A DNA stretch of 64,000 nt, from positions 88,908,001 through 88,972,000 of the forward strand of contig OZ296652.1 in the NCBI GenBank assembly GCA_965655095.1, written 5' to 3'. A program made the translations under genes and the position numbers. The stretch's first letter is position 1. Every line of letters starts with the position of its first letter. Shown piece after piece: positions 27,201-58,379 of this stretch. The notes beneath the pieces are model-generated. The model was not told where the DNA came from. It saw nothing but the letters and a program-made list of their open reading frames with translations, and did no database searches. The DNA is from Haplodiscus bocki (lineage: Eukaryota).

Positions 27201-27400
27201 TCTTTAAGAACGAAGTGTCTGACATCGCTGGTAGTTCCTGTTTTTCTGCTGCTTGGATGGCTGCAGAAGTATGCGGTTTCTCCAGGAAGCATTGTGGAGA
27301 GGCTCTAATTTTATATTCGGCTGTAGAATTTACGAGGAAAAATCTCACAATTTGCTAGTGGGAGGTATCTTGAAAAAGAAAGACCTGAGGACGTTGTTCG

Positions 27401-31638: not shown

Positions 31639-31676
31639 CACACACACACACACACGCACACACACACACACACACA
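31639..31676. repeat. (CA)n microsatellite
   Basis: About 19 CA units with one CG interruption, within a CA/GA-rich stretch. Confidence 0.95.
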
Positions 31677-36200: not shown

Positions 36201-39200
36201 CAACCAGGAACAGCGACCTCCAAATCAATTTTTTACCAAACCGCGAAAAAATAACATCAACTACTTTAACCTGTGCTTGCAGTTACTGCACCGTGATTTT
36301 GTTGGCGTCGAAGCGGAGTGCGTGTAACCAAAAAGCTGATTAACTGACTGCCCGGTTGTGGGGGGCTGCACCCAGTTGTGGGTGCTCTAACTAATGTTTT
36401 TGATGAAAGTCTCTGGAGGAAAGCAGTAAATATTTGACACTGTATTATTTGACATGAAATTGGAAAAGCAATATTCTCAGACCTAGTTGTAATGATTATT
36501 TGAACAAAGGCCTCAATCAAGAACAGCGACCTTCATATAATTTTTTTCACTGGGAATCCCAAGAATTTCGTCACCACATTTCATCTGTCCTATGGCAAAA
36601 AAAAATTAACCCAATTGAATCAGACATACAACAACCGCGTTTGTTTTCATTGCTCTGTTTGTTTTTGGTTCATAATCGAAGCCCTTTACCTTTAATTTCT
36701 CCAACATCCTAACTTTCCCAAACCTGACTTGAAAAACACTCAAGACCTCGTTTTTGAAACTCTATTGTTTTCAAAATGCAACTGGACGCAAACCAACGAC
36801 CAGAAACTTTCAAGATGTTGTCCAGTGTTTCTGGACGGCAGCGACGACACTGAAATGTTCCCTGAAATGCCTAAAACTTTAAACTGGCTTTGCAGTCAGT
36901 CAAAAAGCCTTAAGTTTTGGTCATTTTTATAGAAAGCCAATGCAAGCTGCAGTTGTCAAAAGAGTGACTGCGAATCTCGACTCTTTCTGTAAAACTATGC
37001 AATGTGACCGAAACTTAGATGCCGTAATAGTTACTGAGACTTCAACCAACACGGTCTATGTCAGTCCTGTAACAAATTTCCCCACCTGAAATTAATGATT
37101 ACGAAATTGTTAGCTTCAAAACAAAGTGCATGGATTGAAAAGACTGATTGAGTGCCTGCCCAGTTGTAGGTGCCTATATCTATTGTTTTTTGATGAAACT
37201 GTGTCTAGGAACGCGGTAAGAAAGTCACACGGTCTTGTTTGACGTGAAGATGGAAGGGCAGGCTTCTACACCTAGTTGTAACGAGGATTTAAATAAAGGT
37301 GTCACTCAAGAAAAGCGAATTCCGTATCTTTCTTTCCACTGAAGTCCCAAAATTTTCCTCCCCAACTTTGATCTGTCCTATGGCAATAAAAACAATTAAC
37401 TCAGCTGAATCAGGCATCCAGCAACTGTGTTTCGTTATAAAGATTTGTTTTTTTGTACTTAATCCAAGCCCTCTTCCTGTACATTCCCAACATCCTAATT
37501 TTCAAAAACTTGACTTCGAATACACTCAAGAGCTCCTTTATAAAACTTTTTTGTTTCTCAAAAACGCAACCGGACGTAAACCAATGACCCGCGAAATCCA
37601 AGATGCTGTCCAGCTGCTTTCGACGGCGCCGCTGACACTGGAGTTATCTTCAAAACGCTCAAATTTTTTTTTTGATTTTGTGGTCTCGAATGAGCTTCAA
37701 GGTTTCGCCTTTTTTTGTAGACTGCCATTGTAGGCTGCAGTTATCAAACGAATGAATGCGAATCTTGGCTTTTCTTGCAAAACCATGTAAGTGAATAAGT
37801 ATCAGAAGCCTTAGCAAGTTGCAGACACATCAGTGAACATTGTCTTTGTCCGCCCTGTCAAAAACTTCCCAATTTCGCATTTACTGTCCTTTATTTTAGG
37901 GCGTCAAAACAGACTGCGTGTAAGCAAAAGAATGGTAAACCGCCAGCCTGAATGTAGGTGGACATACCGAAACGTTTTTTGATGAAATTATGTTTAGCAA
38001 CTGATGTTGTAAAACAACGTAATGTGATCAACAATCAGAGGCCATAGCAGGTGTCTGAGACGTCAGCTAAGTCGGTCATTGTCTGTCCTGTCACAAGCTC
38101 CCCAACATACAATTACTGACTACGACTTAGTTAGCGTCTCAAAACAAAGTGCGCTTGAGCAAAAGGCTGATAAATCGCCTGACTGGCTGTGGATGGACAT
38201 AACTAATGTCTTTTGATGAAAATTAGTCTCGGAACGCAGTAAATATTTCACACTATCGTGCTTGACATGGAATTGCAGTAGCAAGATTCTCAAACCTAAT
38301 TGCAACGGGGATTTGAACAAAGGGCTCAATCATGAACAGCGACCCGCATATCTTCAATTTCCCCAAACATCCAAAAAACGTCGTCACCTTATTTGATCTT
38401 TTCTATGTCAAAGAAAAAAATTAAACCTTTTGAACCATACATGCATCGATTGTGTTTTTGTATATGGCTTTTTTTTGTAAATAATCCAAGCCTTCTTCCT
38501 GTGTTTTCACAACTTCCTATTTTTCGCAAAGTTGACTTCGAATACAGCCAACAGCTCGTTTTGGTTCAATCTATTGATTCGGAAAAACGCAACTGGACAA
38601 AAATCAACGACCCAAGACATTCAAGATGTTTTCCAGCCGCTATCGACGGCGGCGCCGACACTGGATTTATCCTCAAAACGCTCAAAAATTTTAATTGTTT
38701 TTGCAGTCTCTGATGGAGCCTCAAGATTTCGTCGTTTTTTGTAGACAGCCAATGCAGGCTGCAGTTGTCAAACGAATGAATGCGAATCTTGGCACTTCTG
38801 GCAAAACAATGTAAGTGACTAAAACTTAGAGGCCTTGGCAAGTTAAATACACATCAATGAACACGGTCTTTGTCCGTCTTGTCAAAAACTTCCGAATGTT
38901 GCATTTACTGTCTTTTGCTTTTAGGCGTCGAAACAGAGTGCGTGTAGTTAAAAAATTGAAAAACCACTTACGCGTCTGTAGGTGGTCATACCGAATATTT
39001 TTGATGAAAGCATGTCTAGGAACGCAAAACGTAAATTACAATGGCTTGTTTTACAAGGAAGCACAAAAGAAAGAACTTCAACCTTGGTCGTAAAGAGGAT
39101 TGGAACAAAGAGTCTCAATCAAGAGCAGCGACATCCCTATCTTCATTTTCGCGAAACTTCCGAGAAAAGTCTCCACCTATTTTGAACTGTCTTATGGAAT

Positions 39201-40060
39201 TAAACACAACCAAACCAACTGAGTAATACACCCTTAATAATAATGTCAATGTTGTCTTTGTGTTTGCTGCCAAAGTTGTTTGGCCTTTTTAGCGCCCTTA
39301 AGGATGCCTAAAATGGCAATGGCTCATTTAGCGGGCATCGATGACAACTAGGTTGTCCTTTTTTTGAGGGAGATTCATGCAGCACATTTGCTGGCCGATG
39401 TTTCAGGCTAAAAACTGTCCTTTACAGCGTTCAAGTTAACGTCCGTAGTAATCAATGACAACTATTTCTTTTTATTTTGCTTCATTTGCATTAAAAACTT
39501 CCAAGCGCTGTTCCTGTAACTTCCCTAACTTCTAAACTTTCCGAAACTTGACTTCGAAAGTTGACAAGGGCTCGGTTTGGGATAGTTTGTTGTTTCTCAA
39601 AGTTGCAACTGAGCGCGAATTAAGGACCATTGGAATTCAAAATGTTTTTCAGTCCCTTTCGACGGCAACGCTTACACTGGAGGTTTCCTAAAGACGCTAT
39701 AAAGTTCAAAATGTTTTTGCAGTCTCTCAATAAGCCTTAAGATTTCGTCGTTTTTTTAGACAGCCCAGGCACGCTGCAGTTGTCAAACGAATGAATAGGA
39801 ATCCCGATTCTTCTTGCAAATCTACTCATTGTGACCAAACCGTAGATGCGTTGGTAAGTTTTTGAGATATCTGCGAACACAGTCTTTGTCCGTCCTGTCG
39901 CAATTTACCAACTTGAAATTACCGCACCGTGGCTTTGTCAGCGTCGAAACAGAATGCGAGTAACCAAGAGGTTGATTAACTGGCTGCCCGGTCGTAGGGG
40001 CTGAAACTTTTGTTTTTTGATAAAAGTGTATGTAGGAAAGCAATCAATATTTCACACTTA
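33262..40060. repeat. Recent segmental duplication in the array: ~33262-35330 repeated at ~38000-40060
   Basis: Near-identical ORF pairs offset by 4734-4738 (33382/38120, 33798/38532, 34307/39041, 35088/39822). Confidence 0.9.
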
Positions 40061-43000
40061 TGTTTGACGTGAAATTGGAGAAGCAAGTTTCTCAAACCTA
40101 GTTGTGACGAGGATTTGAACAAAACTCTCAACCAAGAACAGCGACCTCCCAATCATTTTTGAACTAAACTGCCAAAAAATCTCGTCACCTACTTTGATCT
40201 GTGATATGCAAGTTAGATTGCTTTGTCTTTCTGTAAAAAAACAAGCCCCTTTTTTTACTTACCTTAAGTTCAAAACTTTTCCAAACGTGACTTCGAAAAC
40301 AGTCAAGAGCTCGTTTTGGAACTTTCTCTGTTTTCTCAAAAAAGCAACTGGAAGCGAATTAACGACCCGCGACTTTCTTGATAATGTCCCATCGCTTTCG
40401 ACGCGAGCGCTAACACTGGAGGTTTCCCGAGAACGTTAAAAACGTTCTAAAGCTTCTGTAGTCTCTCAATCAGCCCTAAGTTTCGTCGCTTTTAGGAGCT
40501 ATCAATGCACGTTACAGTTGTCAAACGAATGAAGTTGAATCTCGATTCTTTTTGCGAATCTAGTCGATGTGACCAAACCACACATGCGTTGGTAAGTTTT
40601 TGAGATATCTGCGAACACAGCCTTTGTCCGTCCTGTCACAAGCTTCCCAACCTGAAATTACTGCACCGTGGCTTTGTTAGCTTCGAAACAGAATGCGAGT
40701 AACCAAGAGGTTGATTAACTGGCTGCCCGGTCGTAGGGGCTGAAACTTTTGTTTTTTGATAAAAGTGTATGTAGGAAAGCAATCAATATTTCACACTGTT
40801 ATGTTTGACGTGAAAGTCGAAAAGCAAGATTCTCAAACCCAGTTGTGACGAGGATTTGCAAAAAGTCTCCACCAACAACAGCGACCTCCAAACCATTTTT
40901 TCCACCAAACAGTCAAGAAAACTCGTCACCTACTTTGATCTGTGCTGTGGCAAAGAAAACAATTAACCCAAATGAACCAAACATGTAACAACTGTGTTTT
41001 TTTAAGTGCTTTGTCTTCCTGTAAAACAACCAAGCCCTCTTCTTGTACTTACCCAAAGTTCAAAACTCTCCCAAACATGACTTCGAAAACAGTCAATAGC
41101 TCGTTTTGGAACATTCTCTTTTCTCTCAAAAACGCAACTGGATGCGAAATAACGACCCGCGACGTTCAAGATGTTGTCCATTCGCTTTCGACGGCGGCAG
41201 TGACACTGGAGGGTTCCTCAAAACGCTAAGAAGTTTGAAATACTTTGGCAGTCTCTCAATAAAACTTAGGTTTCCGTCGTTTTTGTAGACAACCAATGCA
41301 CGCTGGAGTTGTCAAACGAATAAATGCGAATCCCGACTCTTCTTGTAAAACTACGTGGGCTGATCACAAATTAGAATATTTGGCACGTTACTGGGACCTC
41401 ATCGAACACGGTCTTTGTCTGTCCTGTCGCAAGCTTCCCAGCTTGCATTTAATGACTACGTTTTTGTTAGCTTCAAAACAAAGTGCGCGTAAGCAAAAGG
41501 CTAAAAAACTGCATGCCCGGCTGTGCGTGGACATGTTTTTTGATGAAAACGTGTCTCGGAATGCAAAAAGTAAGTCACACTGTAAAAAGTAAGCAAGACT
41601 AACAAACTTGGTTGTGAGGCTGACTTGAACGAAGGTCTCAATTGAGAGCATCGACATCGATATTTTCGTTTTCATCCTACTTTCAAAATATTTTTGTCAC
41701 CTACTTTGATCAGTCTTGTTGCAATTAATACAATTTAACCAATCAAATCAATCATCCTGAGGATCATTGTTTTTGTCTTTGCTGCGATTGTCGTGTGGCT
41801 TATCTGCCGCCCTTGAGGTTGCTCACAGGTGCAAGCAAACCTTTCGCGGGTATCGATAACGATTACGTCATCATCCCTTGGCATGGTCCTAACGTTTGCA
41901 GGAAGAGTCTTGCAGCGCGTTCCATAGCTGGTGTTTCCGACTAAGAGTTATCAATTATAGCGTTCGAGGAAACGTTCGTGGTAACCAACCACAACTCTTT
42001 TTTTATAATGCTGTGTTTTAATGGGAAAACTTCAGGGCCTCTTCTTGTTTTTTCCCTAACTTCTAAAATTTTCCAAACCTGACTTCCAATAGAGACGAGA
42101 CCTTGTTTTGGAATGTTCTATTGTTTCACAAAAACGCAACCGCACGCGAAACAGCGACTTATGACATTCAAGATGTTGTCCAATGGTTTTCGACGCCAAC
42201 TGTGACACTGGGGTATGCCTAAAAACGTTTAAATGGTCAAAATGCTTTTGCAGTCCATCAAAAACCCAAAATTTTGTCGTTTCTGTAGACAGCCAATGCA
42301 CGCTGCAATTATCGAAGGAAGGAATTCAACTCCCGATTCTTCTTGCGAATGTATTTAATGTAACAAAAAACTGAGGCGCTGGCACGTTTTTGAGACATCT
42401 GCGAACATGGTTTTCGTCCGTCTTGTCAAAAGCTTCCTAACTTTTCTTTTACTGTCTGCTATTTTTGAGGCTTCAAAACAGAGTTTGTGTAACCAAAAAA
42501 CTGATGAACCCCTCGTCCAGCTGTAGTTAGACACCACTAGTCTTTTCCGATGGAAGTGTGTATAGGAACGCAGAAAAATAACCACACTGTCTTGTGTCGC
42601 ATGGAATTGCAGAAGCAAAGTTTTCAAACCATCTTGTGACGATAATTTGAAGGAAGGTTTCATTCAAGAACAGCGACATCCATATTTTTTTTCACCATAC
42701 ATCAAATATATCTCGCTACCTATTTTGATCTGTCGTATGGAAAGGAAAACTTTTAATCCAAATGCTAGAGACACCATTAAAAATGTTGTCTTCGTGATTG
42801 CTGCAATTGTCTTGTGGCTTATGTACCGCCCTTAGAGATACTTATGATGGCAAGTACATCTTTTGCGGGCGTCAAAAACGACTAAGTTTTCATCCCCTTG
42901 CATGGCCTTATCCTTTGGAGGAAGACTCATGCAGCACGTTTCTTAGCTGGTGTTTCCGACGAAGAGCTATCAAATATTTTGTTCGAGGATACGTTCTTGG

Positions 43001-46000
43001 CAACCAAACACAACTGTGTTTTTTTAAACTGCTTTGTTTCGATGCAAAAATTCAAGGGTCTCATCCTGTACTTTCGCTACCTTCTAAATTTTCCTAAGCT
43101 TGATTCCCAATAGAGACAAGACCTTGTTTTGGAATGTTTGATTGTTTCACAAAAACGCAACTGGCCACGAGCCAACGACCTTTGACATTCAAGTTGTTTT
43201 CTAATCGCTGTGGACACCAACGGGCTCACAGGAGTTTCCTAGAATTCCTAAAAAAGGTTAAAATGGTTTTGCAACTTCTCAAAAAGGCCTAAGATTTCGT
43301 CGTTTTTATAGACAACCAATCCACGCTGGAGTTGTTGAACGACTGAATGCGAATCTGGACTCTCCTTGCGAATCTACATAAAGTGACCAAAAGTAATATG
43401 CGTTGGCAAGTTACTGAGACATCTGCGGTCTTCGTTTCTCTCAAGCCTCCCATCCTGCAATTACTGAACCCGACTTTGTTAGCATCAGAACAGAATGCGC
43501 GGAACCAAAAAGCAGATAAGCAGCCCGTTCGGGTGTTGCTGGACATAACTAATGTTTTTTGATGAAAGTGTGTCCAGGAACGCAAAAAATGTCACAATGT
43601 CGAATTTGACATGGAATTGCGAAGGCAATGTTCTTGAAATTAGATGTAAGGAAGATTTGAACGAACCTCTCAAACACAAACAGCGTTATCCATTTCTTCG
43701 ATTCCACCTTACGTCCGAGAAAAACTCGTCACTTACTTTAATCTGTCTTGTGGCAATGAAAGCAAATTATCCGATTGAATGAGATACGCTTATGACTGTT
43801 GTCTTTCTTTTCGCTACAGTTCTCGTGTGGCCTTTGTTCTACCCTTGAAGATACTTTCGAATGCAAGGACACCTTTTACGGGCATCGATTTTGACTACGT
43901 TTTGATCTTTTTGGAGGAAGATTCATGCAGCAAGTTTCCTTGCCATTGTTTCCGTCTAAGAGTTGTCATTCAGGTCCTTGGTAATCAACCATTTCTGTGT
44001 TGTTTGTTTTGTCATGTTTTTTTGTAGCTAATCCAAGCCTTGTTCCTGTCTTTTTCCTAATATCTCAAACCTGATTTGGAATACAGTCAAGAGCTTGTTT
44101 CGGAGTGTTCTATCAGTTTTCTAATATGCAACTGGGCGCGAACTAACAACCCGCGACATTCGAAAAAGTCTCCAGTAGATTTCGACGCCTGCGCTGACAC
44201 TGGGGCATTCTCAAAAACGCTGAAAACGTTAAAATGCTTTCGCTCAATTATCCCTTATATTTCGTCGTTTTTATAGGCAGCCAATGCATGCTGCATTTCT
44301 CGAACGATTGAATGCAATTATCGACTCTTCTTGCAAAACTACGTTTTGTGACAAGAACTCGGAGATCTTGGCAAGTTACTGAGACCCCAGCGAACACGGT
44401 CGTCGTCCATCCTGTCACAAGTTTTCTAACTTGCAGCTACCGACCACAGTTTCGTGATGTTCAAAACAGAGTGCTCGTAACCAAAAGTCTGATAAACTCC
44501 TCTCTTCAGTGGGTAGACATAACCTATATTTTTTGATGAAATTGTGTCTTGAAACGCAGTAAGGACCTCGTACTGTCAGGTATGACAAGGGATTGCAAAG
44601 GCCAGCATCTCAAACCGAGTTGTGACGAGGATTTGAACAAAAGTCTCAATCAAGAGCAGCGACATGGATATCCTAATTTTCAGTATATGTCCACTCAAAT
44701 CTCGTCACGTAGTTTGATCTGTCTGCAATGAAAACAACTAAACCAAATGCATCAGACACCCTTTTCAATGTTGGCAATGTTGTTTTTGTGTTTGCTGCGA
44801 TTGTTGAGTGGCTTTTTAACAGACCGTTAAGGATCATTACAGTGGCAGGGACAATTTTTACAAGCATCAATAACGACTAGTTTGTCATATACTGGCAAGG
44901 CCCTATCGTTTGGAAGGATATTCATGCAGAACGTTTTCCTGCCGGCGTTTTCTACTGGAAGCTATCATTTATGGCTTTCGAGGTAACGTCCGAGAAAATC
45001 AACAACAACTGCGTTTGTCATTTTGCTTTGTTTCCATGCAAACCTTCCTAGCCCTTTTCCTGTAATTTCCCCAACTTCTTAACTTTTGCAAACTTGACTT
45101 CGATTATAGACAAGAACTGGTTATGTAAAACTCTTTTGTTTGTCAAAAATGCAACTGGTTGCGATTGAACGACCGGTAACACTCAACATGTTGAACGGTC
45201 GCTTCCGATGGCGACGCTGACATTTGAGGGTTCCTCAAAACGCTAAAAATCCAAAATGATTTTTCAGTCTCTCAATAAGACTTATGATTTCGTCGTTTTT
45301 GTAAACAACCAATGCACGCTCAAGTTGTCAAAGGAATGAGAGAATTTCGACTTTTCTTTGAAAACTACGTAAGGAGACCAAAACATAGAGCCCTTGGCAA
45401 GTTACTGAGACATCAGGGAACGCTGTCGTTGAGCCTCTTGTCACTAGCTTCCCAACTTGACCTTACTTACTACGATTTTGTTAGGATCACAACCAAGTGC
45501 TCGTTATCAAAAGTCCGGTTAATTGCCTCTCCCCATTGGGTCCACATAACCTATGTTTTTTGATGAAAGTGTGTCTTGGAGCGCAGTAAAAAATTCACAA
45601 CGTCGTGTTTCACGTGAAATTGCAAAGGCAGGGTTTTCAAACTTAGTTGTAACGAGGATTTGAGCAAACGTCTCAGTCAAGAGCAGCGTTTTTCATACCT
45701 TCAGTTCTACCAAAAGTCCAAGAGAAATTCGTCATTTCTTGTGTTCTGTCTTAAGGGGATGAAAATAATTAAACCAAAAAAAACAGACACCTTTATCAAT
45801 GTTGCGATTGTAGTTTGGCTGATGTACCGCCCTTAAGAATGCTTACGATGGCGATGACATCTTTGACGGGCAGTGATAACGACTAAAATGTCACACCTTG
45901 GCGTGGCCCCATCGTTTGCAGGAAGATTCATGCAGCACATTTCCTTTCCGGTGTTTCCAACAGAAAACTGTCAATTACAGGTTCGAAGTAACGTCCATGG

Positions 46001-48603
46001 TAATCAACTACAACTTGGTCTTTTTAGGGGCATTGTTTTTTCGAACAATCGAAGCCTTCTTCTTTTGATTTCCCTAACTTCTAAGTTTTCCCAAATTTGA
46101 CTTCGAAGACAGTCAAGAGGTTGTTTTGCAATGTTCTGTTGTTTCTCAAGAACGCAACTAGACCCGCGATATTCAAGATGTTTTCTAGTCATTTTTGACG
46201 GTGGCGCTGACATTGGAGGGTTGCTCAAATCGCTAAAATGTGAGTATGATTTTGCAGCCTCTCAATAAGCCTTAAGATTTCTTCCTTTTTAAATACAGCC
46301 AATGCACGCTCTAATTGTCAATTGATTGAATGCGAATCACGACCATTCTTGAGAATTTAAGTAAAGTGACCAAAACATACATGCGTTTGCAAGTTACTAA
46401 TGCATCTGGGAACACGGCTTTCCTCCATCTTGTCATAAGCCTCCTAACTTTGCATTTATTTTCCGCTATTTTTCAAGCGTCAAAACAGAGTGCCTGTAAC
46501 CAAAAGGCTGGTTAACTGCCTACCCGGTTGTAGGTGGACAAAGTCAGTGGTTTTTGACGAAAGCGTGTCCGGGAATGCAAAACATAAGTCAAATTGGAGT
46601 GTTTTACATGGTTTTTTGAAGGCAAGTGTCTCAAACCTGGTTAGCTGGAGGGGATGGGAACAAAAGGTCTCAATCAACAGCAGCAATTTCCATATCTTCC
46701 TTTTCACCAAATTTCCAAAAAATCTCGTCATCTACTTTGATCTCTCCTATTGAATTGAAAACAATTAAACCAACTGAATCAGACATACAACAACTGTGTT
46801 TTTTTATAACGCTTAGTTTTTATATAAATAATCAAAGTTCTCTTCCAGTAATTTCCCTAACTTCTAGATTTTCTCAAACTTGACTCCGAATATAAACAAC
46901 AACTCGTTCTGGAATGTTCTACTGGTTCTCAAAAGTGTAGTTGGCTATGAACAAACGAACCGCGAACTTCGAGATGTTGTCCAGTTGCTTTTGATGGCGG
47001 CGGTGTCTTTGGAGTGTTCCTCCAAACGCAAAAAGTTTGAAATACCTTGGCAAGCTCTGAATTGGACTTAGGTTTTCGTCGTTACTGTAGACAGCTAATG
47101 CCGGCTGCAGTTGTCAAACGAAAGAATGAGAATCTCGGCTCTTCATGCGAAACTACATAACGTGACCCAAAGTTAGAGGATTGGCAAGTTAATGAGATCT
47201 CATCGAACACAGTCTTTGACTCTCCTGTCAGAAGCTTCCCCACTTGCAATTACTGACTACGGTTTTGTTATCTTCAAGACAAAAGGCGCGTAACCAAAGG
47301 CTGATAAACTGCCTGCTTGGCTGTGCGTGGACATAACTATTGATTTTTAAAGAAAGTGTGTCTAGGCATGCAAAAGGTAAGTCACACTGTCAATTTTGAC
47401 GTGGAATTTCAAAGGCAAGACTCCCTAGTTTAGTCACGATTATTTGAACCAAAGTCTTAATCAAGAACAGCGACATCGGTACCTTCAATTTAATCAAAAG
47501 CCCAAGGTAATCTCGTCACCTACTTTGTTCTCACTTATGGCAAAGTGGACAATTGAACCAAATGAATCAGACACCCTCAAGAAATTTGTCTTTGTGTTTC
47601 CAGCGATTGTCGTAAGGCTTCTGTACGGCCCTCATGGACGCTTACAAGAGCAAGGACACTTTTTACGGGCATCGTTTACGACTAATTCGTCATCCCATGG
47701 CATGGCCCTGTCGTTTGGGAGGAGATTCATGCAAAATGTTCCCTTGCCGGTGTATCCGACTAAAAACCGCTTTTTATGGCGTTCATCGTAACATCCTTGG
47801 TGACCAATTACGATTGTGTTTTTCTATTTTGCCTTGTTTGTAAGTAAAACATTGAAGCCTTGTCACTGTACTTTCCCTAATTTCTATTTTTTCTTCAAGT
47901 TTGTCTTCGAACACAGTCAAGAGCTCGTTTTGTAATGTTCTGCTGGTTCTCAAAAATGCAACTGGGTGCGAAAGATTGACCCACAATATTCAAGTTGTTG
48001 TCCAGTTCAAGCTTCTTCAATGTCCGAATAAGCCCCAAGTTTTCGTCGTTTTGTAGACAGCCAATGCACACTGTAGTCGTCGAACAAATGATAACAAATC
48101 TCGACTCCTCTCGCAACCCTAGGTAAAATTGACCAAAAATATGAGGCGTTGGCAAGTTACTGAGACATCTTCAAATATTGTCGCTGTCCATCTTGTCACA
48201 AAGTTTCCACTTTGCAATTAGTAACCGCGACGTTTTCGGCGTCAAAACAGAGTGCGTGTAACCAAAACGCTGATGAACCACCGGTCCAGCTGTAGGTGGA
48301 CACAACTTTTGTTTCTTGTTGGAAGTGTGTATAGGCACAGTGAAAATTAGTCACACTGTCATGTCTCACATGGAATTGCAAAGGCAAGATTCTCAAACCT
48401 ATTTATGGTGATTGTTTGAACGAAACTCTCAATCAAGAACAGCGACATCGGTATTTTCTTCCTCACGATACGTCCAAGAAAATCTTGTCACCTGCTAGGA
48501 TCTGTGTTATCGCAAGGAGAACAATTGAACAAAACGAAAAAAACACCCCCATGAATGTTATCTTTGTGTTTCCTGTGCTTGTCGCGTGGTTTATGCACTG
48601 CCT

Positions 48604-51410
48604 TCCGAGAACAGACAAGAGCTCGAGTTGGAAAGATTTGTTGTTTCCCAAAATTGCAACTGGATACGAATTAACGACCGTTGACATTCAATATGTTGCT
48701 CAGCAGCTTTCGGCGGTAAAGCTGACAATGGAGGCTTCCTAAAAGTGCTAAAAAAAGTTGAAATAGTTTTGAAGTCTCTCAACAAGCCTTAGGATTTCGT
48801 CGTTTATTATGAACAGTAAGTGCACGCGTCAGTTGGTGAACGAATGAACGCAAATCTCGACCCTTGTCGCAACTCTACAAAAAATGACCAAACGTTAGAG
48901 GCGTCGGCAAGTTAGTGAGACATCTGCAAACATGGTCTTTGTCCATCCTGTCACAAACTTCCCACGTTGCAATTACTGACCGCGACTTTTTTTGGCGCCA
49001 AAACAGAGTCCGCGTAATCAAAAGGCTGATAAACTGCCTGCTGTAGATGGACAAAACTAATGTTTTCTGATGGATAGAAATATAGGAAAGCAAAAAAAAA
49101 AGAATCAAAGGCTTATGTTTTACAAGGATATGCGAAGCCAAGGTTCTCAAATCTACTTGTGACGATTATTTGAACGAAAGTCCTAATAAAGATCAGCAAC
49201 AAGGGTACTTCCATTTTCACCGAACGTCCAAAAAATCTCGTCACCTACTTTAATCTGACTTTTGGCAAAGAAGACAATTGAACCCAACGAATCAGACACC
49301 CTCATAAAGGTTGTCTGTGTGTTTGCAGCGACTGTCGTAAGGCTTTTGTACCGCCCTCGCGGAAGCTTACGATGGCAATGACCCCTTTTACGTGCATATA
49401 TAACTAATAAATCGTCTTCCCCTAGCACGGCCCTATCGTTTGAAGGAACATTCAAAACAGACAAAACGTTTCCTTGGCGGTGTTTTGGACTCAGCGTTGT
49501 CATGTATAGCGTTCGAAGTAATGCCCTTGGTAAACAATTGTAGCTGTGTTTTCTTATTTTGCTTTGTTTTTATGTAAATAATCCAAACCCTGTTCCTGTA
49601 CTTTCGCCAACATGCAAATTTTCTAACATGACTTCGTATACAGTCAAGAGCTCGTTGATGATCTTTCTATCGATGCTCAAAAATGCAACTGCGCGCGAAC
49701 TAACAACCCGCGACATTCAAGATAGTATCCTGTTGCTGTCGACGCCGGCGCTGACACTGGGGCTTTCAAAAAAATGGCATAAAAGGTTAAATGGTTTTGA
49801 AGTCTCTGAAAAATCCCGAAGTTTTCGTCCTTTTTACAAACAGTCAATGGATGCGGAAAATATCGAACGAAAGAATGCAAATCTCATAACTCTTGCAAAT
49901 CTACGTAATGTGGCCAAAATTTAGAGGCGTTGGCAAGTTATTGAGACATCTAAAAACATGGTCTTTGTCCATATTGTCACAAACTTCCCACTTTGCAATT
50001 ACTGACCACGACTTTTTCATGTCAAAAAACAGTACGTGTATTCATGAGGCTGCGGAACCAACTGCCCGGCTGCAGGTTGACATAACTATTGCCTTCTCAT
50101 GGGAGTGTGAATAGAAACGCAAAATATTATTCACACCGTCATGTTTCACATCCAATTGCAAAGGCAAGTTTCTCAAACCTTTTTCCTATTTGTGGCGATG
50201 ACTTGAACGAAAACCTCAATCAGGAACATTGACGTCGGTACCTTCATTTTCAACATATGTCCAGGAAAATTTCGTCAACTACTTTGATCTGTCTTATGGC
50301 AAGGAATGCAAATGCACCGAACGAATCAGACACTCTTGAATAAAGTTTCTGTGTTTGCTGCGGTTTTCGCGTGGCTGATGTACCGCCCTTGAGGATGCTT
50401 ACGATGTCAAGAATGCGTTTTACGGGCATTGATAACAACAACGTCGTTTGCCCCTTGGCGTGGTCTTATCTTTAGGAGGAAGACTCATGCAGATCAGATC
50501 GTTTCCTTGCCGGTGTTTTTTTAATAAAATCTGTCTTTTGTAGCGTTCGAGGTAACGTGTTTGATAACCAACCACAAATGTGTTTCTTCTGTTTCGTTTT
50601 ATTTTATGTAAAAAATGAAAGCCCTGTTGCGGTACTTTCCCTAAATTCTAATTTTTCTCAAATTTGACTCCGAGAACAGACAAGAGCTCGTGTTGGAAAG
50701 ATTTGTTGTTTCCCAAAATTGCAACTGGATACGAATTAACGACCGTTGACATTCAATATGTTGCTCAGCAGCTTTCGGCGGTAAAGCTGACAATGGAGGC
50801 TTCCTAAAAGTGCTAAAAAAAGTTGAAATAGTTTTGAAGTCTCTCAACAAGCCTTAGGATTTCGTCGTTTATTATGAACAGTAAGTGCACGCGTCAGTTG
50901 GTGAACGAATGGACGCAAATCTCGACCCTTGTCGCAACTCTACAAAAAATGACAAAAAGTTAGAGGCGTTGGCAAGTTAGTGAGACATCTGCGAACATGG
51001 TCTTTGTCCATCCTGTCACAAATTTCCCACGTTGCAATTACTGACCGCGACTTTTTTTGGCGCCAAAACAGAGTCCGCGTAATCAAAAGGCTGATAAACT
51101 GCCTGCTGTAGATGGACAAAACTAATGTTTTCTGATGGATAGATATACAGGAAAGCAAAAAAAAAAGAATCAAAGGCTCATGTTTTACAAGGAAATGCGA
51201 AGCCAAGGTTCTCAAATCTACTTGTCACGAATATTTGAATGAAAGTCCTAATAAAGAACAGCAACAAGGGTACATTAATTTTCACCGAACGTCCAAAAAA
51301 TCTCGTCACCTACTTTAATCTGACTTTTGGCAAAGAAAACAATTGAACCCAACGAATCAAACACCCTCATAAAGGTTGTCTTTGTGTTTGCAGCGTTTGT
51401 GGTAAGGCTT
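48604..51410. repeat. Recent duplication in the array: ~48604-49345 repeated at ~50669-51410
   Basis: Near-identical ORF pairs offset by 2065 (48875/50940; ends 48785/50850). Confidence 0.88.
49183..49503 (-). pseudogene. SET-domain C-terminal half in one long monomer
   Basis: ORF reads DDLLVIYARKRGHCHRKLPRGRYKSLTTVAANT...IVFFAKSQIKVGDEIFWTFGE, corresponding to SET IDA...RFINH..PN...ifA.rdI..GEEl..dYG. Confidence 0.8.
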
Positions 51411-51700
51411 TTATACCGCCCTCGTGGATGCTTACAAGGGCAAGGACACTGTTTACGAGCATCGTTTACGACTAAGTTGTCGTACCCTGGCATGGCCCTG
51501 TCGTTTGAATGGAGATTCATGCAGAACACTCCCTTGCCCGTGTATTCGACTAAAGGTTGTCATTTATAGCGTTCGAAGTAACTTTTTTGCTAAGCCACCA
51601 CAACTGTTTTTCCGTATTTTGCCTAGTATTAACATAATTAATCCAAGGCCTGTTCGTGTACTATCCCTAACTTCTAAAAGTTCTCAAACTTGAATTCAAA
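51275..51700 (-). pseudogene. Full-length decayed SET domain in one long monomer
   Basis: Manual translation LEVRDSTRTGLGLI...(fs)TVVVA*QKSYFERYK*QPLVEYTGKGVFCMNL runs into ORF 51275-51529 ...NLVVNDARKQCPCPCKHPRGRYKSL...AANT...IVFFAKSQIKVGDEIFWTFGEN. Confidence 0.8.
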
Positions 51701-53289
51701 TACAGTCAAGAGCTCGTTCTGGAGTGTTCTATTGATTCTCAAAAATGCAACTGGATGCAAACCAAAGATCCTCGACATTCAAAATGTTGTCCAAGTGCTT
51801 TCAACGCCGGCGCTGACACTGGAGGGTTCCTAATAACGCAAAGAATGTTAAACTTCTCTGGCAATTTCTCAATAGGCCTTAAGATATTGTAGCTTTTTTA
51901 CACAACCAATGCACACTGCGGTTGTCGATCGAAGAAATAAGAATACCGACTCTTCTTGGATATCTAAGTACCGTGACCAAATGTTAAATGCGTTGGCAAC
52001 TTAGTGAGACATCTGCAAACACGGTCTTTGTCCGCCCTGTCACAAACTTCCCATCCTGCTGTATACGAGCGCGATTTTGTTAGCGTCAAAACAAAGTGAG
52101 AGTAACCGGAACGCTTATAAACCGCCTGCTCGGCTGTAGGTGGACATAACTATGGCTTTGTGATAAAATTGTGTATAGGAATGCCAAAAAATAGTATTGG
52201 AATTAGGAGGCAAGGTTCCCAAAACTATTTGTGGCAAGGATTTATACCAGGGTCTCAAACAATCATGAGCAGCGACATCCAAAACTTCTTTTTCATCACG
52301 TCCAAAAATATCTTGTCACCTACGTTGATCGTTGTTATCCGATGAAAACAATCAAACCAAGTGAGTGAGACACTCTCTTGAAGGTTGTATTTGTGTTTTC
52401 TGAGATCATCGTGTGGCCTACGTACCCCTTTATGGACGTCTAAGATGGCAAGGATACCTTTTACGGGCATCGATAACAAATAGATCGTCCGCCCCTAGCA
52501 TGGTCCAATCAATTGGAGGAAGATTCATGCAGCACGGTGCCCTGCCGGCGTTCCCGATAAAAAGGCGTTATTTAAAGCGTTCGAGGTAATAGCTGTTGTA
52601 ATCAACCACAACTGTTTTTTTAATCCTCTGTCTTTTTATCAGTAATCCACACCTTTGCTTGTGCTTTCCCTAACTTCTAATTTTGTCCAAACTTGACCTC
52701 GAAAACACTCAAGAGCTCCTTTTGGAATGTTCTACTGTTTCTCAAAATTGCAACTGGCCGCAGACCAACAACCCGCGACTTTCATGATGTTGTCTGGTCG
52801 CTTTCGACGCCAGTGCTAAAACTGGAGGATTCCGAAAAACGCTAAAATTGTTAAATTGCTTTTGCAGTCTCTCAATGAGCTCTAAATTTTCGCTGTTTTT
52901 ATAGACAGCCAATTCACACTGCAGTTGCCGAGCGAATAAATGTAAGAAAATCTCGACTCTCCTTGCAAATTTATGTAATGTGCCCAACATTTACAGGCGT
53001 TGGCAAGTTACTGAGACAGTTGGGAACACCGTTTGCGTCAGGTTTGTTACGAGCTTCTAATCTCACAGTTAGTAAACACAGTTTTTTAGCGTGAAAACAG
53101 AATGCGTGTAATCAAAAGGCTGATAAAACCACACTGTTAGCTGTAAGAGGACATGACAAACATTTTGTGACCAAAGTGTGTCCAGGAACGCAAAAACTGT
53201 GTCTCAACGTCTTGTTTCACATGGAATTGCAAAGGCAAGACTGCAAACCTAGTTGTGACGAGGATTTGAGGAAAGGAGTTAACCAAGAA

Positions 53290-53760
53290 CATCGACAACC
53301 ATACTTTCTTTTTCACCATACGTCCAAAACTATCGCAACACCTACTGTGATCGTTCTAATGGCAATGAAAACAATTAAACCATATGATTCAGACAACCTC
53401 TTGAAGGTTGTCTGTGAGTTTGCTGCGATCATCTTGTGGCGTATGGTGAGCGCTTATGGATGTTTACGATGGGAAGGATAGCTTTAACGGGCATCGATAA
53501 CAACTAGGATGCCATCCCTTAGCATGGTCCTATCGTCGGGGGAAGATCCATGCAGCACGTTGCCTTGCCGTTATTTCCGAGCCGGAGCTGTCTTTCACAG
53601 CGTTCGAGGTAACTTCCGTGGTAACCAGCCACAACTGTCTTTTTTATAGTCCTTTTTTTCGGTAAATAATCCTAGCTCTCTTCCTTTACCTCACCCAACT
53701 TCTAACTTTTGCCAAACTTGACTTCCAAAACAGTAAAGAGCTCGTTTTGGAATGTTCTAT
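53290..53760 (-). pseudogene. Full-length decayed SET domain in one long monomer
   Basis: Manual translation: SQVWQKLEVG*GKGRELGLFTEK(fs)RTIKKTVVAGYHGSYLERCERQL...ILVVIDAR*SYPSHRKHP...IAANSQ...YGLIVFIAIRTITVG(fs)...WTYGE. Confidence 0.8.
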
Positions 53761-56700
53761 TGTTTCTCAAAATGCAAGTGGCTGCAGATGAACGACCCCG
53801 GACATTCAGCATGTTCTCCATTCGCCTTCGACTCCAGCGCCAACACTGGAGGTTTCCCAGGAACGTTCAAAAACTTCAAAAGCTTTTGTAGTCTCTCAAT
53901 AAGCCCTAAGTGTTTTCGTTTCTATGGACCGTCAATGCACGCTGCAGTTGTCGAACGTTTGGCGAATCTCGATTTTTCTTGCGAATCGACGTAATATGTC
54001 GAGAACTTAGATGTATTGGCGAGTTGGTGAGAAATCTGCTAACACAGTCTTTGCCCGTCCTGTCATAATTCTCCCTTCCTGCAGTTATTGACCGCCATAT
54101 TGTTAGCGTCAAAACAGAGTGCGTAACCAAAAGGTTGATGAAGCACCTGCCTGGCTGTAGGTGGACATAACGAATGTTTTTTGATGGAAGTGTGGATAAA
54201 ACGCAAAAAAAATCAGTAACACTGTCCTGTTTCACATGGAAATGCAAAGGCCAGACTGCAAAACATTGTTGTGACGAGGATTTGAACAGAGGTCTCAGTC
54301 AAGAACAGCAACAACCATACCTTCTTTTTCACCATACGTCCAAAAATATATCATCACCTACTTTGATCGTTCCTTTGGCAATTAAAACATTTAAACCAAA
54401 CGAAGCACACATCTTCATGACTGTTGTTTTTGTGTTTGCTGCGGTCAGTGCGTGGCTTATGTTGCGCCCTTATTGATGTTCACGATGGCAAGGACATCGT
54501 TTATGAGCATCGATGACGACTAAGTTGTCATCCACTAACATGGTCCTATCGTTTGGAGAAAGATTCATGCAGCACGTTGCCTTGTTTGTGTTTCCGAGCC
54601 AGAGCAGTCTTTTATAGCGTTCGAGTTAACGTTCCTGGTAATCAACAACAACTGTATTTTTAGGGTGTTTTTGTTTTTTTTTGTGCACAATCCAAGCCCT
54701 TTTTGAGCTTTCCCTAACTTCTAATTTTTCCCAAGCGTAACCTGCAAAACAGTCAAGAGCTCGTTTTGGATGGTTCTTCTGTTTCTCAGAAGGGTAACTG
54801 GCCGCGGACAAACAACCGACGACAACCAAAATGTTGTTCAGTCGCTTCCGGTGCAAAAGCTAACACTGGAGGATTCCTAAAAACGCTAACTTTTTTTAAA
54901 CGGTTCTGCAATCTCTCGACAAGCTAAAAGGTTTCGTCGTTTTTATGGACCACCTATGCACGCTGTAGTTGTCGAACGAATGAATGCAAACCTCGGCTTC
55001 TTTTGCAAATCTACGTAATAAGCATTCGCAAGTTTTTGAGACATCTGACAACACGGTTTTTGTCCCTCCTGTCAAAAACCAACCATCTTGCATTTATTGA
55101 CCGCGATTTTTTTAACGTCAAAACAGCATGCTTTTAACCAAAAGGTGATATTTCACCTGCCCTGCTGTAGGTGGACATAACGAAAGATTTTTGATAAACT
55201 TGTGGATAGGATTGCCAAAAATTAGTTGCTCTTTCATCTGTCAGATGGAATTGCAAAGACAAGATTATCAATACTTGTTGTGCTGATGATTTGAACAAAA
55301 ATCTCAATCAAGAACGGCGATATTTGGTACCTTCAATTCCACTATACGTCCAAGAAAATCTCGTCACCTACTTTGAACTCTCTTATGGCAAGGAGGACAA
55401 TTGAACCAAATGAATCAAACGCCCTCATAAAATTGTTTTTGTATTTGCTGCGATTGTCTTTTGGCTTGTGTACCGCCCTTATGGATGCTCAGAATAGCGA
55501 GGAGATCTTTTACCGGCGTCGGTAACAAAAAAGTCGTCATCACCTGGCATGGCTCTGTTCTTTGGACAAAGATTCATGCAGCACGTTTCTCTTTGCCAGT
55601 TTTTCCGACTGGGAGTTGTCTTTTACAACGTTCGAGGTAATGTCTCTGGTAGTCAACTGAATTTTTGTTTTCGATTCTGCTCTGTTTTTATGTAAAAATT
55701 CCTGCACTTTCCCTAACTTCTCAACTCTCCCCAACCTGATTTCGGAATCAGTCAAGCGCTGATTTTGAAAAGTTCTGTCCTGAAAAGGGCGACTGACCGC
55801 GGACCAGCGACAGACCACATTCAAAATGTTGTCCAGTCACTTTCGACGCCCGCAGTAACAGTGGAGGTTTCCTAAAAATGCTAAAATAGTTAAATGCTTT
55901 TTCAGTCTCTTAACAAGTCCTAAAATTTCGTCGCCTTCAAGGACCGCCAATGCTTTTTGCAGTTGTCGAACGAATGAATGCGAATCTCCATTCTTCTTGC
56001 GAGTCTACGTAATGTGACTAAAACTTACAGGCGTTGGCAAGTTAGTGAGAAAACTGGGAACACGGTCTTTGTCCGTCCTATCACAAGCTTCCCATCCTGC
56101 AGTTATTGACTCCATTTTCAATAGCGTCAAAGCAGAATGCGCGTAACCAAAAGTTTCTTGGGACGCTTGCCAGGCTGAAGGAGAAAATACCTAATCGTTT
56201 CCGATTAATGTTTGTTTAATAACACATAAAACTGTACACATGGTCAAGGTTGACACGGAAATGCAAATGCAGAAATCACAAACTCAGTTGTGACGAGGGT
56301 TTGAAAAAAGTCTCAACCATGAACAGCGACATCAATATCTTTAACTCCACCATACGTCCAAAAAATCTCGTCACCCTTTTTGATATATCTTATGGCGATG
56401 AAAACAATTGATACAAATGAATCAAACACCCTTATGAATGTTGTTTTGGTAATAGCTACAATTGTCGTGTGGCCTATGTAACACGCTCAAGGATGCATAC
56501 GATAGCAATGACACCTTTCACGGGCATCGGTAACCTTTATGGGAGTCATGCAACACATTTTTTGCCAGTGTTCTTGACTAAAATCTGATATTCACAGGTT
56601 CGAGGGAGCGTCCGTGGTAATCAGCTACAAGTGTGGTTTTTTAGTGCTTTGTTTTTGTGAAGAATCCAAGCGCTCTTCCTGTACTTCCCCTAACTTCTAA

Positions 56701-58379
56701 ATTTTCCCAAACTTGACATCCAAAATAGTCAAGAGCTCGTTCGGACAATTCTGTTTATTCTCAGAACTGCAACTGGCTGCAAACCAACGTTCGGTGACAT
56801 TCAAATACGCGTGAGCAAAAAGCTGATAAACTGCCTGCCCGGCTGTTGGCGGAAATAACTAAGGTTTTTCGATGAAAGTGTCCAAGATTGCGAAAACGAG
56901 GTCACTCCGTCATGTTTGACAAGGAATTTTGTAAGAAAAATGTCTATAAATGCCCAACGGTTTAAGCGTTCACGAAGTCTACGGCAATTGAGGAGCGGAA
57001 TAGAGGTTTTTCAAAACATGATGGCACATTCACTTACCAATGCGGATCTGAGATGTGAAATCTGGTTTTTAGGAACACTAAACCATTTCCAAAACGGCAG
57101 TGAAAATGTTTCAATATTTTTTGAGGGCATGAGTGGCTGAAATTTCGAAGACCAATTTCATGAAAAAACCAGATATTTTTTTCGTAAGTAGAAGCTACTA
57201 AATGTACGAGTGAAAGCTCCCCAAACCATATAAAACTCTATAAATACATAGATAGATCAATAGGAGCAGGTACAATTCTCAGCCAGAAAAGCTTGTTTCG
57301 CGAAAACGAACTGAACCATGAGGAAGTGCTTTGGAAGTCATCAAACTGTTTCATGAAAACCGGTATCAGCTCTTCCACTTCCGCCAACAGGGCACTGTAC
57401 GCGTAGCTGGGTGTCCATGGCGCCCCCAGGCACTAAATAACAATGGTTGACTGCTACTCATATGGTTTTATTCCTAATGCAGTCGTGTTACAGTTGTACA
57501 AAGGAATGGTCAACAAAAAGCTTGCAACTTTCATTAGTGCGAGTGAAACTGACTGATCCCTTCCGGCTACTGGTCTAGTAGTCTGTAATTCCAAGTGTTC
57601 GTTGCTTCCACACGGACAACGGTTAATGCTAGTCAACAAGTGACCTACACTGCCAGGTTGTTCCCCTCTGGAGTCTTCTTTCCCTTTTAGCCGAACAAAA
57701 ACAATGTGAGTACAGTTCTTTTTGGTCTTCCTCAGGAAATCAAATTATCCTTTGTCTCCCATAAACAAAACCTAATCTTTTGGGCTATCAGAATTCTCAG
57801 ATACCTGAAAAACGATAACCAAATTGGTCGCATTCCGGCAACATGTTGATTTGGATCATCGAAGCAACCCAGGACGAAAATTAAAACCTTCAGCGAAAAC
57901 TGCAATAGAAAATTATTGGGTGCAGAGTTCTCATTTCCTTCTTCAACAAATCCGTATTGGGGATGAGTGAGCCACTCCAGTGAACCCAATGGACAACAGC
58001 TACAACCAAATACCTCACGAAAAATTGTTTCTGACTTTGTTGTACGCTGGGAGATCCTCTCTTAAGCGTGCCATCTTTGATGGGATCGTCGGTCACTTCA
58101 ACAACGGTAAGGTTAAAAAAACACTTGTGGAATCATGGACAAAATGTTTCAATAACAGCAGATAATCAACAAAAAGCGAGCAAAGTTCCTCACTTTGTGT
58201 CATAAATTGAACTTGTATGTAGTTTCTGGCGCATACACTACGAAAAAAAAACAAGAAAACGAAATCTATTCGACGAAAAGGTGGGATTTAAGAAGGAGGT
58301 TATTGGATGTGGACGCAACGGCCGCCAGCATTCGGACTTGGATTCTTTAATTTTCTTCCATTTTTCTGGTTCTGCTGAC

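What the first reader, a model, noticed from the sequence alone, without database searches (positions are those of the whole stretch)
41700..56932. Macrosatellite whose monomer is a SET-domain (lysine methyltransferase-like) gene
Seen: stitching minus-strand translations of several long units gives the approximate consensus ...IFEKQQNIPKRALDCxxSQVWEKLEVRESTGRGLGLF...IKNTVVVDYHGRYLERYKRQ...TGKxxCCMNLPxNDRTMLGDDDLVVIDARKxCxCHRKHPxGRYISHTTIAANTKTTFMRVSDSFGLIVFIAIRQIKVGDEIFWTYGE...VAVLD*. Pieces are visible in track ORFs 54626-54856, 46004-46228, 49183-49503, 51275-51529 and 1432-1728. Known: SET domains have, in this order and similar spacing, GxG (motif I), YxG (II), RFINH..PN (III) and GEELxxDY (IV). 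Inference: about 40 units (~35 kb of this window) are tandemly amplified, decayed copies of a methyltransferase-like gene, so a chromatin-modifier coding sequence has become satellite DNA. It may be a fossil of a gene or TE-cargo amplification, or a source of small RNAs against an intact paralogue. No copy I translated is intact.
Basis: partly seen in the sequence, partly recalled or inferred. Interest (0 to 1): 0.9.

Follow-up and report, generated by a model that had tools for sequence, protein, structure and literature searches.

The report
Dead satellite built from SET-gene fragment
About 42 head-to-tail copies of a roughly 1-kb piece of a histone-methyltransferase-like (SET-domain) gene fill 35 kb of this window, but every copy is broken and has decayed neutrally, so this is a fossil repeat of a known kind and not a working gene family.

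Summary
The window carries two same-strand tandem arrays, A (731-11,632) and B (33,255-56,937), with about 42 units in all. Units are about 1,020 bp, or about 785 bp where one shared 235-bp deletion is present. Coding sense is the minus strand, and the longest ORF is 128 aa.

The SET reading also holds, but only through intermediates:
- Direct Pfam hits are marginal, and PDB profile searches found no SET protein.
- A profile of window fragments found two SET-bearing ORFs among 1.8 billion proteins (E 2.5e-5).
- hhalign against those ORFs gives 98.3% probability.

The monomer is not a whole gene. It is the 5'-truncated 3' part of a two-domain gene: the tail of an unnamed domain "X", a linker, the full SET domain, the natural stop, and about 100 nt.

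Units are 69-74% alike in a star-like pattern. Diversity is equal at all three codon positions, and many units share the same stops. The sequence was therefore amplified and then decayed as dead DNA.

One- to 1.4-unit copies lie at unrelated loci of the same assembly. A homologous SET sequence forms its own 420-bp satellite in another assembly.

Earlier scan notes list many gene- or TE-fragment macrosatellites in this genome, but not this one.

Verdict: new member of a known kind, of moderate interest.

The parts
33255..56937 (-). Array B: about 27 units or partial units (15 long of about 1,020 bp, 8 short of about 785 bp, 1 other deletion variant at 48,097-48,848, plus partials). In coding sense it starts at unit position c733.
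731..11632 (-). Array A: 13 full short units plus 2 partial units. All carry the same 235-bp internal deletion (unit positions about c340-574), which removes the SET core. The array starts at unit position c711.
41328..56805 (-). Block of long units that keep the whole SET-derived region. It is interrupted by one short unit (46,334-47,126) and one variant unit (48,097-48,848).
49186..49569 (-). Longest stop-free stretch, 128 aa. Its last ~96 aa (49,186-49,476) are the central and C-terminal part of the SET domain. The first part is in a shifted frame.
   Evidence: Pfam SET E 0.026, below the curated cut-off
51278..51559 (-). 94-aa stretch carrying the NH-motif region and the C-terminal G-D-E-I-F...Y-G motif in one frame.
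56316..56486 (-). 57-aa C-terminal SET piece. It is the only window fragment above Pfam's SET gathering score (23.4 versus 22.4 bits).
44968..45078 (-). 37-aa stretch joining the GxG motif and the V-V-D-(Y/F)-x-G motif in one frame. It is colinear with residues 49-81 of the SET ORF P0007.
47635..47823 (-). 63-aa stretch running from motif II to just before the NH motif in one frame. The next piece, 47,497-47,631, follows after a single stop.
6502..6792 (-). Best-matching example of the domain-X tail and linker that precede SET in every unit. It is homologous to the ORF upstream of P0007 in locus L001.
   Evidence: (tblastn E 1.6e-9; 40 HSPs across the two arrays)
11633..33254 (.). 21.6-kb non-satellite block between the arrays. 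It has one weak Helitron_like_N hit and a 3,871-bp tandem duplication (14,643-18,513 and 18,508-22,378; 99.95% identical).
33262..40211 (-). Recent segmental duplication inside array B: 33,262-35,482 matches 38,000-40,211 at 97.3%.

Best explanation
This is a dead satellite. A fragment of about 1 kb from the 3' end of a gene encoding an unnamed N-terminal domain (X) followed by a C-terminal SET domain was copied head to tail in a burst. The fragment was already non-functional, or was never under selection after copying. Early in the burst a 235-bp deletion removed the SET core from one unit, and that short form was co-amplified; it makes up all of array A and a third of array B. All units then decayed neutrally to about 70% identity without homogenisation. 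Later events were small local re-duplications and the appearance of a 21.6-kb block of other DNA between the two arrays. The arrays encode no protein today. Steps shown here: tandem structure, SET and X homology, shared lesions, neutral decay, and dispersed short copies. Steps inferred: the copying mechanism. It could be unequal exchange, or a circle or rolling-circle intermediate with a preferred start point, which is hinted at by the clustered array starts.
For: Tandem arrays and unit classes.

SET homology:
- The profile search finds SET-bearing ORFs P0007 and P0008 at E 2.5e-5 among 1.84 billion proteins.
- Their Pfam SET E-values are 1e-9 and 3e-10.
- P0007's best PDB hits are KMT5A/SETD8 and EHMT2; P0008's are EHMT1/EHMT2.
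- hhalign gives 98.3% probability, E 2e-14.
- The joint alignment is colinear.
- SET is the only Pfam family that recurs among the fragments, in 5 of 32.

Domain X upstream of SET, in the same order as in L001.

The same TGA ends the SET frame in all 9 units checked.

Dead at or soon after amplification:
- Nucleotide diversity is equal at codon positions 1, 2 and 3 (0.30, 0.29, 0.315) and equal to the non-coding part, 0.31.
- The same in-frame stops are shared by 37-67% of units.
- All short units share the same deletion breakpoints.
- The unit lacks the first half of domain X.

Burst followed by decay: star-like pairwise identities of 0.69-0.74 with only a few recent duplicates.

Dispersal: copies of 1 unit and 1.4 units on two other contigs of the same assembly, with unrelated flanks.
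Against: - Direct evidence for SET is thin. Only one fragment exceeds Pfam's cut-off, by 1 bit.
- Profile searches of the PDB found no SET protein, and their only hit was an AIM2 HIN domain at E 0.046.
- The N-terminal GxG region rests on one 37-aa fragment and was not confirmed by a profile.
- AlphaFold models of the nearest relatives were unusable.
- The source gene has not been found intact anywhere. Even the L001 copy has X and SET in different frames.
- Stops shared by about half of the units could mark early sub-lineages and need not date from the founder.
- The amplification mechanism is not shown.
Confidence: 0.78

Rival explanations
1. The arrays are laid down by, or are cargo of, a mobile element. 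The X-SET module would belong to a transposable element, and the head-to-tail units would be produced by that element's own replication, for example rolling-circle copying from a fixed start, and not by ordinary unequal exchange.
For: - Paralogues of domain X are antisense genes inside LTR-bounded retroelements at two loci, L006 and L008, and sit in the same position next to pol at a third, L005.
- Short copies lie at unrelated loci.
- Three independent array or copy starts fall within 23 nt of the 1,023-nt unit (c711, c730, c733), and a fourth is at c790. By my arithmetic that is roughly a 0.002 chance under uniform starts.
- A Helitron-like remnant lies between the two arrays.
- A homologous SET sequence also forms arrays in another assembly.
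Against: - The flanks of the four loci share nothing.
- No pol, LTR or transposase lies next to the arrays in the window.
- No similarity was found between the unit and the ends of the intervening block.
- Array starts do not share a TC start.
- The X genes inside LTR elements lack SET.
Confidence: 0.12
2. This is a decayed tandem gene family. Each unit was once a working small SET gene, and the cluster later died.
For: The natural stop codon is kept in every unit checked. Nearly the whole unit is coding-derived.
Against: - No third-position excess of diversity.
- Inactivating stops are shared by many units.
- Domain X is cut off at the 5' end of the unit.
- Only about 100 nt lie between one unit's stop and the next unit's coding-derived part.
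- Half of the units carry the same deletion of the SET core.
Confidence: 0.05
3. The resemblance to SET is spurious, and the unit derives from something else or from no gene.
For: Pfam hits are marginal. PDB profile searches give no SET hit and a weak HIN hit.
Against: - A whole-library E-value of 2.5e-5 to ORFs that are themselves clear SET members.
- hhalign probability of 98.3%.
- Colinear motifs over about 130 residues.
- The gene order X then SET is conserved with L001.
Confidence: 0.02

Closest known systems
Gene-carrying human macrosatellites (D4Z4/DUX4, RS447/USP17, TAF11-like, CT47; review PMC5687341)
   Same: Kilobase-scale head-to-tail units, tens of copies, each unit built around a protein-coding sequence.
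   Different: Per the review, the RS447/USP17 ORF is functional and the D4Z4, TAF11-like and CT47 ORFs are intact or putatively coding. They also have high unit identity (my own knowledge). Here the unit holds only a gene fragment, every copy is broken, identity is about 70%, and there is no sign of selection.
Satellites derived from transposable-element coding or internal sequence (for example tandem repeats derived from maize centromeric retrotransposons, PMC3648361)
   Same: An internal piece of a longer repeated sequence becomes the monomer of a tandem array, and short and long versions coexist.
   Different: The transposable-element status of the X-SET source is unproven. Only paralogues of its first domain are seen inside LTR elements, and those are in another assembly.
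KMT5A/SETD8-type SET domains
   Same: The SET domain sits at the very C-terminus with a stop a few residues after the last motif. KMT5A/SETD8 is the best solved-structure match of the nearest ORF relative, P0007.
   Different: The match is only about 27 bits. Most units have S where the cofactor-binding NH motif has N. No activity can be claimed.
SET domains associated with mobile elements (SETMAR; and, per unchecked scan notes s1-376376, s1-364275 and s1-359274, SET-transposase and SET-recombinase elements in this genome)
   Same: A chromatin-writer-like domain keeping company with repeats.
   Different: No transposase or recombinase is fused or adjacent here. The profile search did not retrieve such proteins.

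Membership tests
SET domain (Pfam PF00856) | Match to the family model above the curated cut-off | tested here: inconclusive
   One of 32 window fragments reaches 23.4 bits against a cut-off of 22.4. Four more score 14-16 bits. The database ORFs P0001 and P0002, which are copies of the repeat, score 25.4 and 24.8 bits.
SET domain (Pfam PF00856) | Homology to undoubted members by profile methods | tested here: met
   hmmsearch gives E 2.5e-5 to P0007 and P0008 among 1.84 billion proteins. Those ORFs have Pfam SET E-values of 1e-9 and 3e-10. hhalign gives 98.3% probability, E 2e-14.
SET domain (Pfam PF00856) | Four motifs (GxG; YxG; NH-containing motif; ELxxDY-like motif) in order and in compatible frames | tested here: met
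   The motifs are colinear with P0007 and P0008 in alignment A7. Adjacent motif pairs are joined in one frame in single units: 44,968-45,078, 47,635-47,823 and 51,278-51,559. No unit keeps all four motifs in one open frame.
SET domain (Pfam PF00856) | SET fold (pseudoknot) and catalytic competence | tested here: inconclusive
   The AlphaFold model of P0007 with alignment A7 had pLDDT 31, so no fold search was possible. All window copies are broken, so activity is excluded for them.
Satellite / macrosatellite DNA | Long head-to-tail arrays of one unit | tested here: met
   About 42 units in two arrays of 10.9 kb and 23.7 kb.
Satellite / macrosatellite DNA | High similarity between units maintained by homogenisation | tested here: not met
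   Pairwise identity is 0.69-0.74 in a star-like pattern. Only three small recent duplications are present.
Tandem gene family | Intact ORFs or a trace of purifying selection between units | tested here: not met
   The longest ORF is 128 aa. Diversity is equal at the three codon positions. Stops are shared between units.
Helitron-type rolling-circle element (non-autonomous, gene-fragment carrying) | Conserved element ends (5' TC, 3' hairpin plus CTRR) at unit or array boundaries | tested here: not met
   Array starts differ in sequence and do not share a TC start. The unit shows no similarity to the ends of the neighbouring Helitron-like block. No 3' hairpin or CTRR end was looked for.
Accessory gene of an LTR retroelement | The gene lies between the two LTRs of an element that has pol | tested here: inconclusive
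   Met for SET-less paralogues of domain X in L006 and L008, which are bounded by LTR pairs of 100% and 98% identity. In L005 the X gene sits beside pol, but no LTR pair was found. Not met for any X-SET copy: the window, L001, L002, L004 and L007 show no LTR or pol around the copy.

The most novel reading that the evidence does not exclude
X-SET would be the cargo of an undescribed mobile element, a chromatin-writer-like module related to antisense accessory genes of LTR retroelements. Its own copying mechanism would start at a fixed point just after the SET stop codon and lay down head-to-tail runs of variable length. That would explain why it has seeded satellites independently in at least two genomes.
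Probability: 0.12. Interest if true: 0.7.

Novelty: new member of a known kind. Interest (0 to 1): 0.36.

Why it matters
Taken alone, this is one more case of coding sequence recycled into satellite DNA, and it has no present coding function.

Three side results give it some value:
- The source is a two-domain gene family, an unnamed domain plus SET, that matches no named protein in the searches made.
- Relatives of the unnamed domain are conserved antisense genes inside LTR retroelements.
- The same SET sequence has turned into tandem arrays in two different assemblies, with array starts that cluster at one place in the unit.

If the clustering holds genome-wide, these arrays could help show how kilobase-unit satellites are born. 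Earlier scan notes suggest that such satellites are unusually frequent in this genome.

Tried and rejected
- TRF found nothing because the period exceeds 500.
- MAFFT cannot order non-overlapping fragments. Alignment A2 stacked the N- and C-terminal pieces on each other and was discarded. I used A3 (middle plus C-terminal) and A6 (N-terminal) separately.
- PDB profile searches with A1, A3 and A6 gave no SET hit. The AIM2 HIN hit (E 0.046-0.29) is judged to be chance: HIN matched one fragment in Pfam at E 0.24, and the SET evidence is far stronger.
- The search for homologous proteins with a 106-aa ORF returned nothing, which is uninformative given its length window. Queries with P0007 and P0012 returned only unnamed ENA proteins.
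- AlphaFold on domain X (pLDDT 40.6) and on P0007 (pLDDT 31.4) was unusable, so no fold searches were run.
- My idea that CpG decay produced the recurrent stops is rejected. CpG observed/expected is 0.93-0.96 in the arrays.
- My idea that the 21.6-kb block is a clean insertion into one array is not supported. Array B ends at unit position c1022 and array A starts at c711.
- The flanks of the four loci share no sequence.
- Rfam and tRNA scans of the window were empty.
- Pfam found nothing in the outer flanks.
- Domain X has no Pfam, PHROGs or PDB match. Its H-x-E ... H pattern reminded me of JmjC/cupin dioxygenases, but that is only a recollection and was not tested.
- The lookup of earlier findings by sequence was blank.
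Full report
**1. What is there**

The window has about 40% G+C and no N. TRF reports nothing relevant because the repeat period exceeds its 500-bp limit. The repeat finder and nhmmer show two tandem arrays in the same orientation. With a profile built from 16 long units, the units can be laid out exactly.

- Array A spans 731-11,632. It holds 13 full units of 771-790 bp plus a partial unit at each end.
- Array B spans 33,255-56,937. It holds 15 long units of 0.96-1.02 kb, 8 short units, one unit with a different internal deletion (48,097-48,848), and partial units.

Every short unit, in both arrays, lacks the same 235 bp (unit positions about c340-574). The short form therefore arose once and was co-amplified.

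**2. No unit is intact**

The longest ORF in the arrays is 128 aa. I made that alignment before any link to mobile elements appeared. I do not reproduce it here and I did not repair it.

**3. Is it SET?**

Direct evidence is weak.
- Among 32 stop-free fragments, SET is the only Pfam family that recurs (5 fragments), but only one fragment passes the curated cut-off, at 23.4 against 22.4 bits.
- Profiles of the fragments find no SET protein in the PDB. Their only hit is an AIM2 HIN domain at E 0.046-0.29.

Indirect evidence is strong.
- The profile of alignment A3 (middle and C-terminal parts, 32 fragments) was searched against 1.84 billion representative proteins. It gave ten hits.
- Six of the ten are ORF calls on copies of this same repeat (P0001, P0002, P0003, P0005, P0009, P0010). 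Two are repetitive proteins (P0004, P0006): an immunoglobulin-repeat protein and one with an FGGY_N hit, each matched only over about 20 profile positions in many short stretches.
- The remaining two, P0007 and P0008 (both E 2.5e-5), are clear SET proteins by Pfam, at 1e-9 and 3e-10.
- Their best matches among solved structures are KMT5A/SETD8, EHMT1/2 and EZH2.
- Profile-profile comparison of A3 with an alignment of P0007, P0008 and P0011 gives 98.3% probability, E 2e-14.
- In a joint alignment the window fragments are colinear with these ORFs from the GxG motif to the last motif.

Frames are compatible with one ancestral ORF.
- Fragment 44,968-45,078 joins the GxG motif and the following V-V-D-x-x-G motif in one frame and aligns with P0007 residues 49-81.
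- Fragment 47,635-47,823 joins motif II to the region before the NH motif.
- Fragment 51,278-51,559 joins the NH-motif region to the last motif.

Most units have S at the N of the NH motif. A dispersed copy (P0002) and one unit keep N. The N-terminal region alone could not be confirmed by a profile.

**4. The unit is more than SET and less than a gene**

The stretch upstream of SET in each unit, read in another frame, is homologous to the ORF that lies directly upstream of P0007 in its contig (L001:9297-10004).
- tblastn of that ORF against the raw window gives 40 HSPs across both arrays, the best at E 1.6e-9 (first seen).
- The order, domain X and then SET, is the same in both places.
- The unit begins inside domain X and lacks its first half.
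- The SET frame ends with the same TGA in all nine units checked. About 100 nt follow before the next unit's X remnant.

Each unit is thus the 5'-truncated 3' end of an X-SET gene. Domain X has no Pfam, PHROGs or PDB match, and its AlphaFold model was unusable.

**5. How the units evolved**

- Pairwise identities are 0.69-0.74 within and between unit classes, in a star-like pattern.
- The exceptions are a 2.2-kb re-duplication in array B (97%), a two-unit re-duplication in array A (88-96%), and three similar short units in array B (86-90%).
- Nucleotide diversity among 15 non-redundant long units is the same at codon positions 1, 2 and 3 of the SET region (0.30, 0.29, 0.315) and matches the unit-wide mean of 0.31, non-coding tail included.
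- The same in-frame stop is shared by 37-67% of units at ten codon positions.
- CpG is not depleted, at 0.93-0.96 observed/expected.

The simplest reading is one burst of amplification of an already dead fragment, followed by long neutral decay without homogenisation.

**6. Copies elsewhere**

The ENA assembly ERZ26859043 contains this window's sequence: the 200 bases at each end of the reverse complement of L003 match the window exactly, near 55,205 and 57,358. Two other contigs of that assembly carry this repeat.
- L002 carries one unit (9384-10351).
- L004 carries 1.4 short units (9427-10603).

The flanks of arrays A and B, L002 and L004 share no sequence. In coding sense the four copies start at unit positions c711, c733, c790 and c730. 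All lie within 25-105 nt after the SET stop, while their ends are scattered (c599, c1022, c773, c145). By my arithmetic, three starts within 23 nt of a 1,023-nt cycle has a chance of about 0.002. This is a small sample, and I treat it as a lead.

**7. Relatives in other assemblies**

All ENA samples named here are unnamed organisms with similar G+C.
- In ERZ25074608, locus L007 holds a P0007-like SET sequence that is itself tandemly repeated. It has about 17 units of about 420 bp (7,667-14,764) that contain little more than the SET domain, next to units of about 1.6 kb that hold the X tail plus SET.
- Those 420-bp units are young (diversity about 0.03), show no codon-phase effect, and nearly all break frame at the same place in the middle of SET, so they are also dead. 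In that script a majority vector served only to index codon phase and was neither printed nor saved.
- Unit boundaries differ from those in the window, and protein identity between the two families is about 33-36%. The two amplifications look independent.
- P0008 comes from a third sample.

**8. Domain X and retroelements**

SET-less paralogues of X (P0012-P0015, 37-44% identical to each other) lie in three loci of ERZ25074608 between an RT-RNaseH-integrase gene set and a further large ORF, on the opposite strand. In L006 and L008 the whole set is bounded by direct repeats of 100% and 98% identity, spaced 12.9 and 12.5 kb apart, which are LTRs. X is thus a conserved antisense gene of a group of LTR retroelements. 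No X-SET copy has been seen inside such an element. Whether the source of the satellite was an element's cargo or a host gene remains open.

**9. Surroundings in the window**

Between the arrays lies 21.6 kb of other DNA. It has one weak Helitron_like_N hit (19 bits, below the cut-off), faint P-loop hints, and a 3.87-kb tandem duplication. An earlier scan note calls this a Helitron-like RepHel with a GIY-YIG domain. I could confirm only the weak Helitron hit. Array B ends at c1022 and array A starts at c711, so the block is not a clean insertion into a continuous array. The outer flanks hold nothing recognisable. There are no Rfam families or tRNAs.

**10. Comparison and verdict**

Macrosatellites whose unit carries a gene are known (D4Z4/DUX4, RS447/USP17, TAF11-like, CT47; PMC5687341). 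Satellites derived from internal parts of mobile elements are also known (PMC3648361). This array is the same kind of thing, with a new source sequence and a fully decayed state.

Earlier notes of this scan, which are unchecked, list many macrosatellites made of gene or transposable-element fragments in this genome. That makes this one less exceptional and points to a genome-wide tendency.

The parts worth following up are the undescribed X-SET family, its link to retroelement accessory genes, the recurrence of SET-derived arrays in two assemblies, and the clustered array starts.

Noticed in passing
L007:1-14764 (ENA ERZ25074608): In another assembly a homologous SET sequence forms its own satellite. 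It has about 17 units of about 420 bp (7,667-14,764; diversity about 0.03, nearly all broken at the same mid-SET frame change), next to units of about 1.6 kb that carry the X tail plus SET.
   Followed up: partly
L006:3904-17137, L008:5694-18705, L005:5201-16855: Paralogues of domain X (P0015, P0014, P0013) are antisense genes lying between pol (RT-RNaseH-integrase) and a large 3' ORF of LTR retroelements. LTR pairs of 100% and 98% identity bound the elements in L006 and L008.
   Followed up: partly
P0012-P0015 (alignment A4): Domain X has a conserved G-H-V-E-E-G-G-D-D-S block and, about 75 residues later, a C-C-H-S-V-L block. The pattern is reminiscent of the H-x-E...H metal site of JmjC/cupin dioxygenases. 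No database match was found and the AlphaFold model was poor, so this is untested.
   Followed up: partly
window 11633-33254: Non-satellite block between the arrays with one weak Helitron_like_N hit (23,549-24,091) and a 3,871-bp tandem duplication at 99.95% identity (14,643-18,513 and 18,508-22,378).
   Followed up: partly
window 11632, 56937; L004:9427; L002:9384: Four independent arrays or copies start at unit positions c711, c733, c730 and c790, just after the SET stop codon, while their ends are scattered.
   Followed up: partly
P0001, P0003 (ENA ERZ26859043) versus window 56487-56489 and 6145-6147: The database 'proteins' on this contig read TGA as W, so they are gene-calling artefacts running through real stops. 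The look-up flags P0001 as 'translates_to_query: no'.
   Followed up: yes
L007:17899-20351: An rve integrase and a faint Pox_A32-type ATPase hit lie next to the SET array in the other assembly. This may be a Maverick/Polinton-like element.
   Followed up: no
window 58000-64000 and 31639-31676: The right flank is AT-rich (G+C 27-33%) with no recognisable genes. A (CA)19 microsatellite sits in the inter-array block.
   Followed up: no
window arrays, profile A3: A weak profile match to the AIM2 HIN domain (PDB 4jbm, E 0.046), with one Pfam HIN hit at E 0.24. It is judged to be chance.
   Followed up: yes
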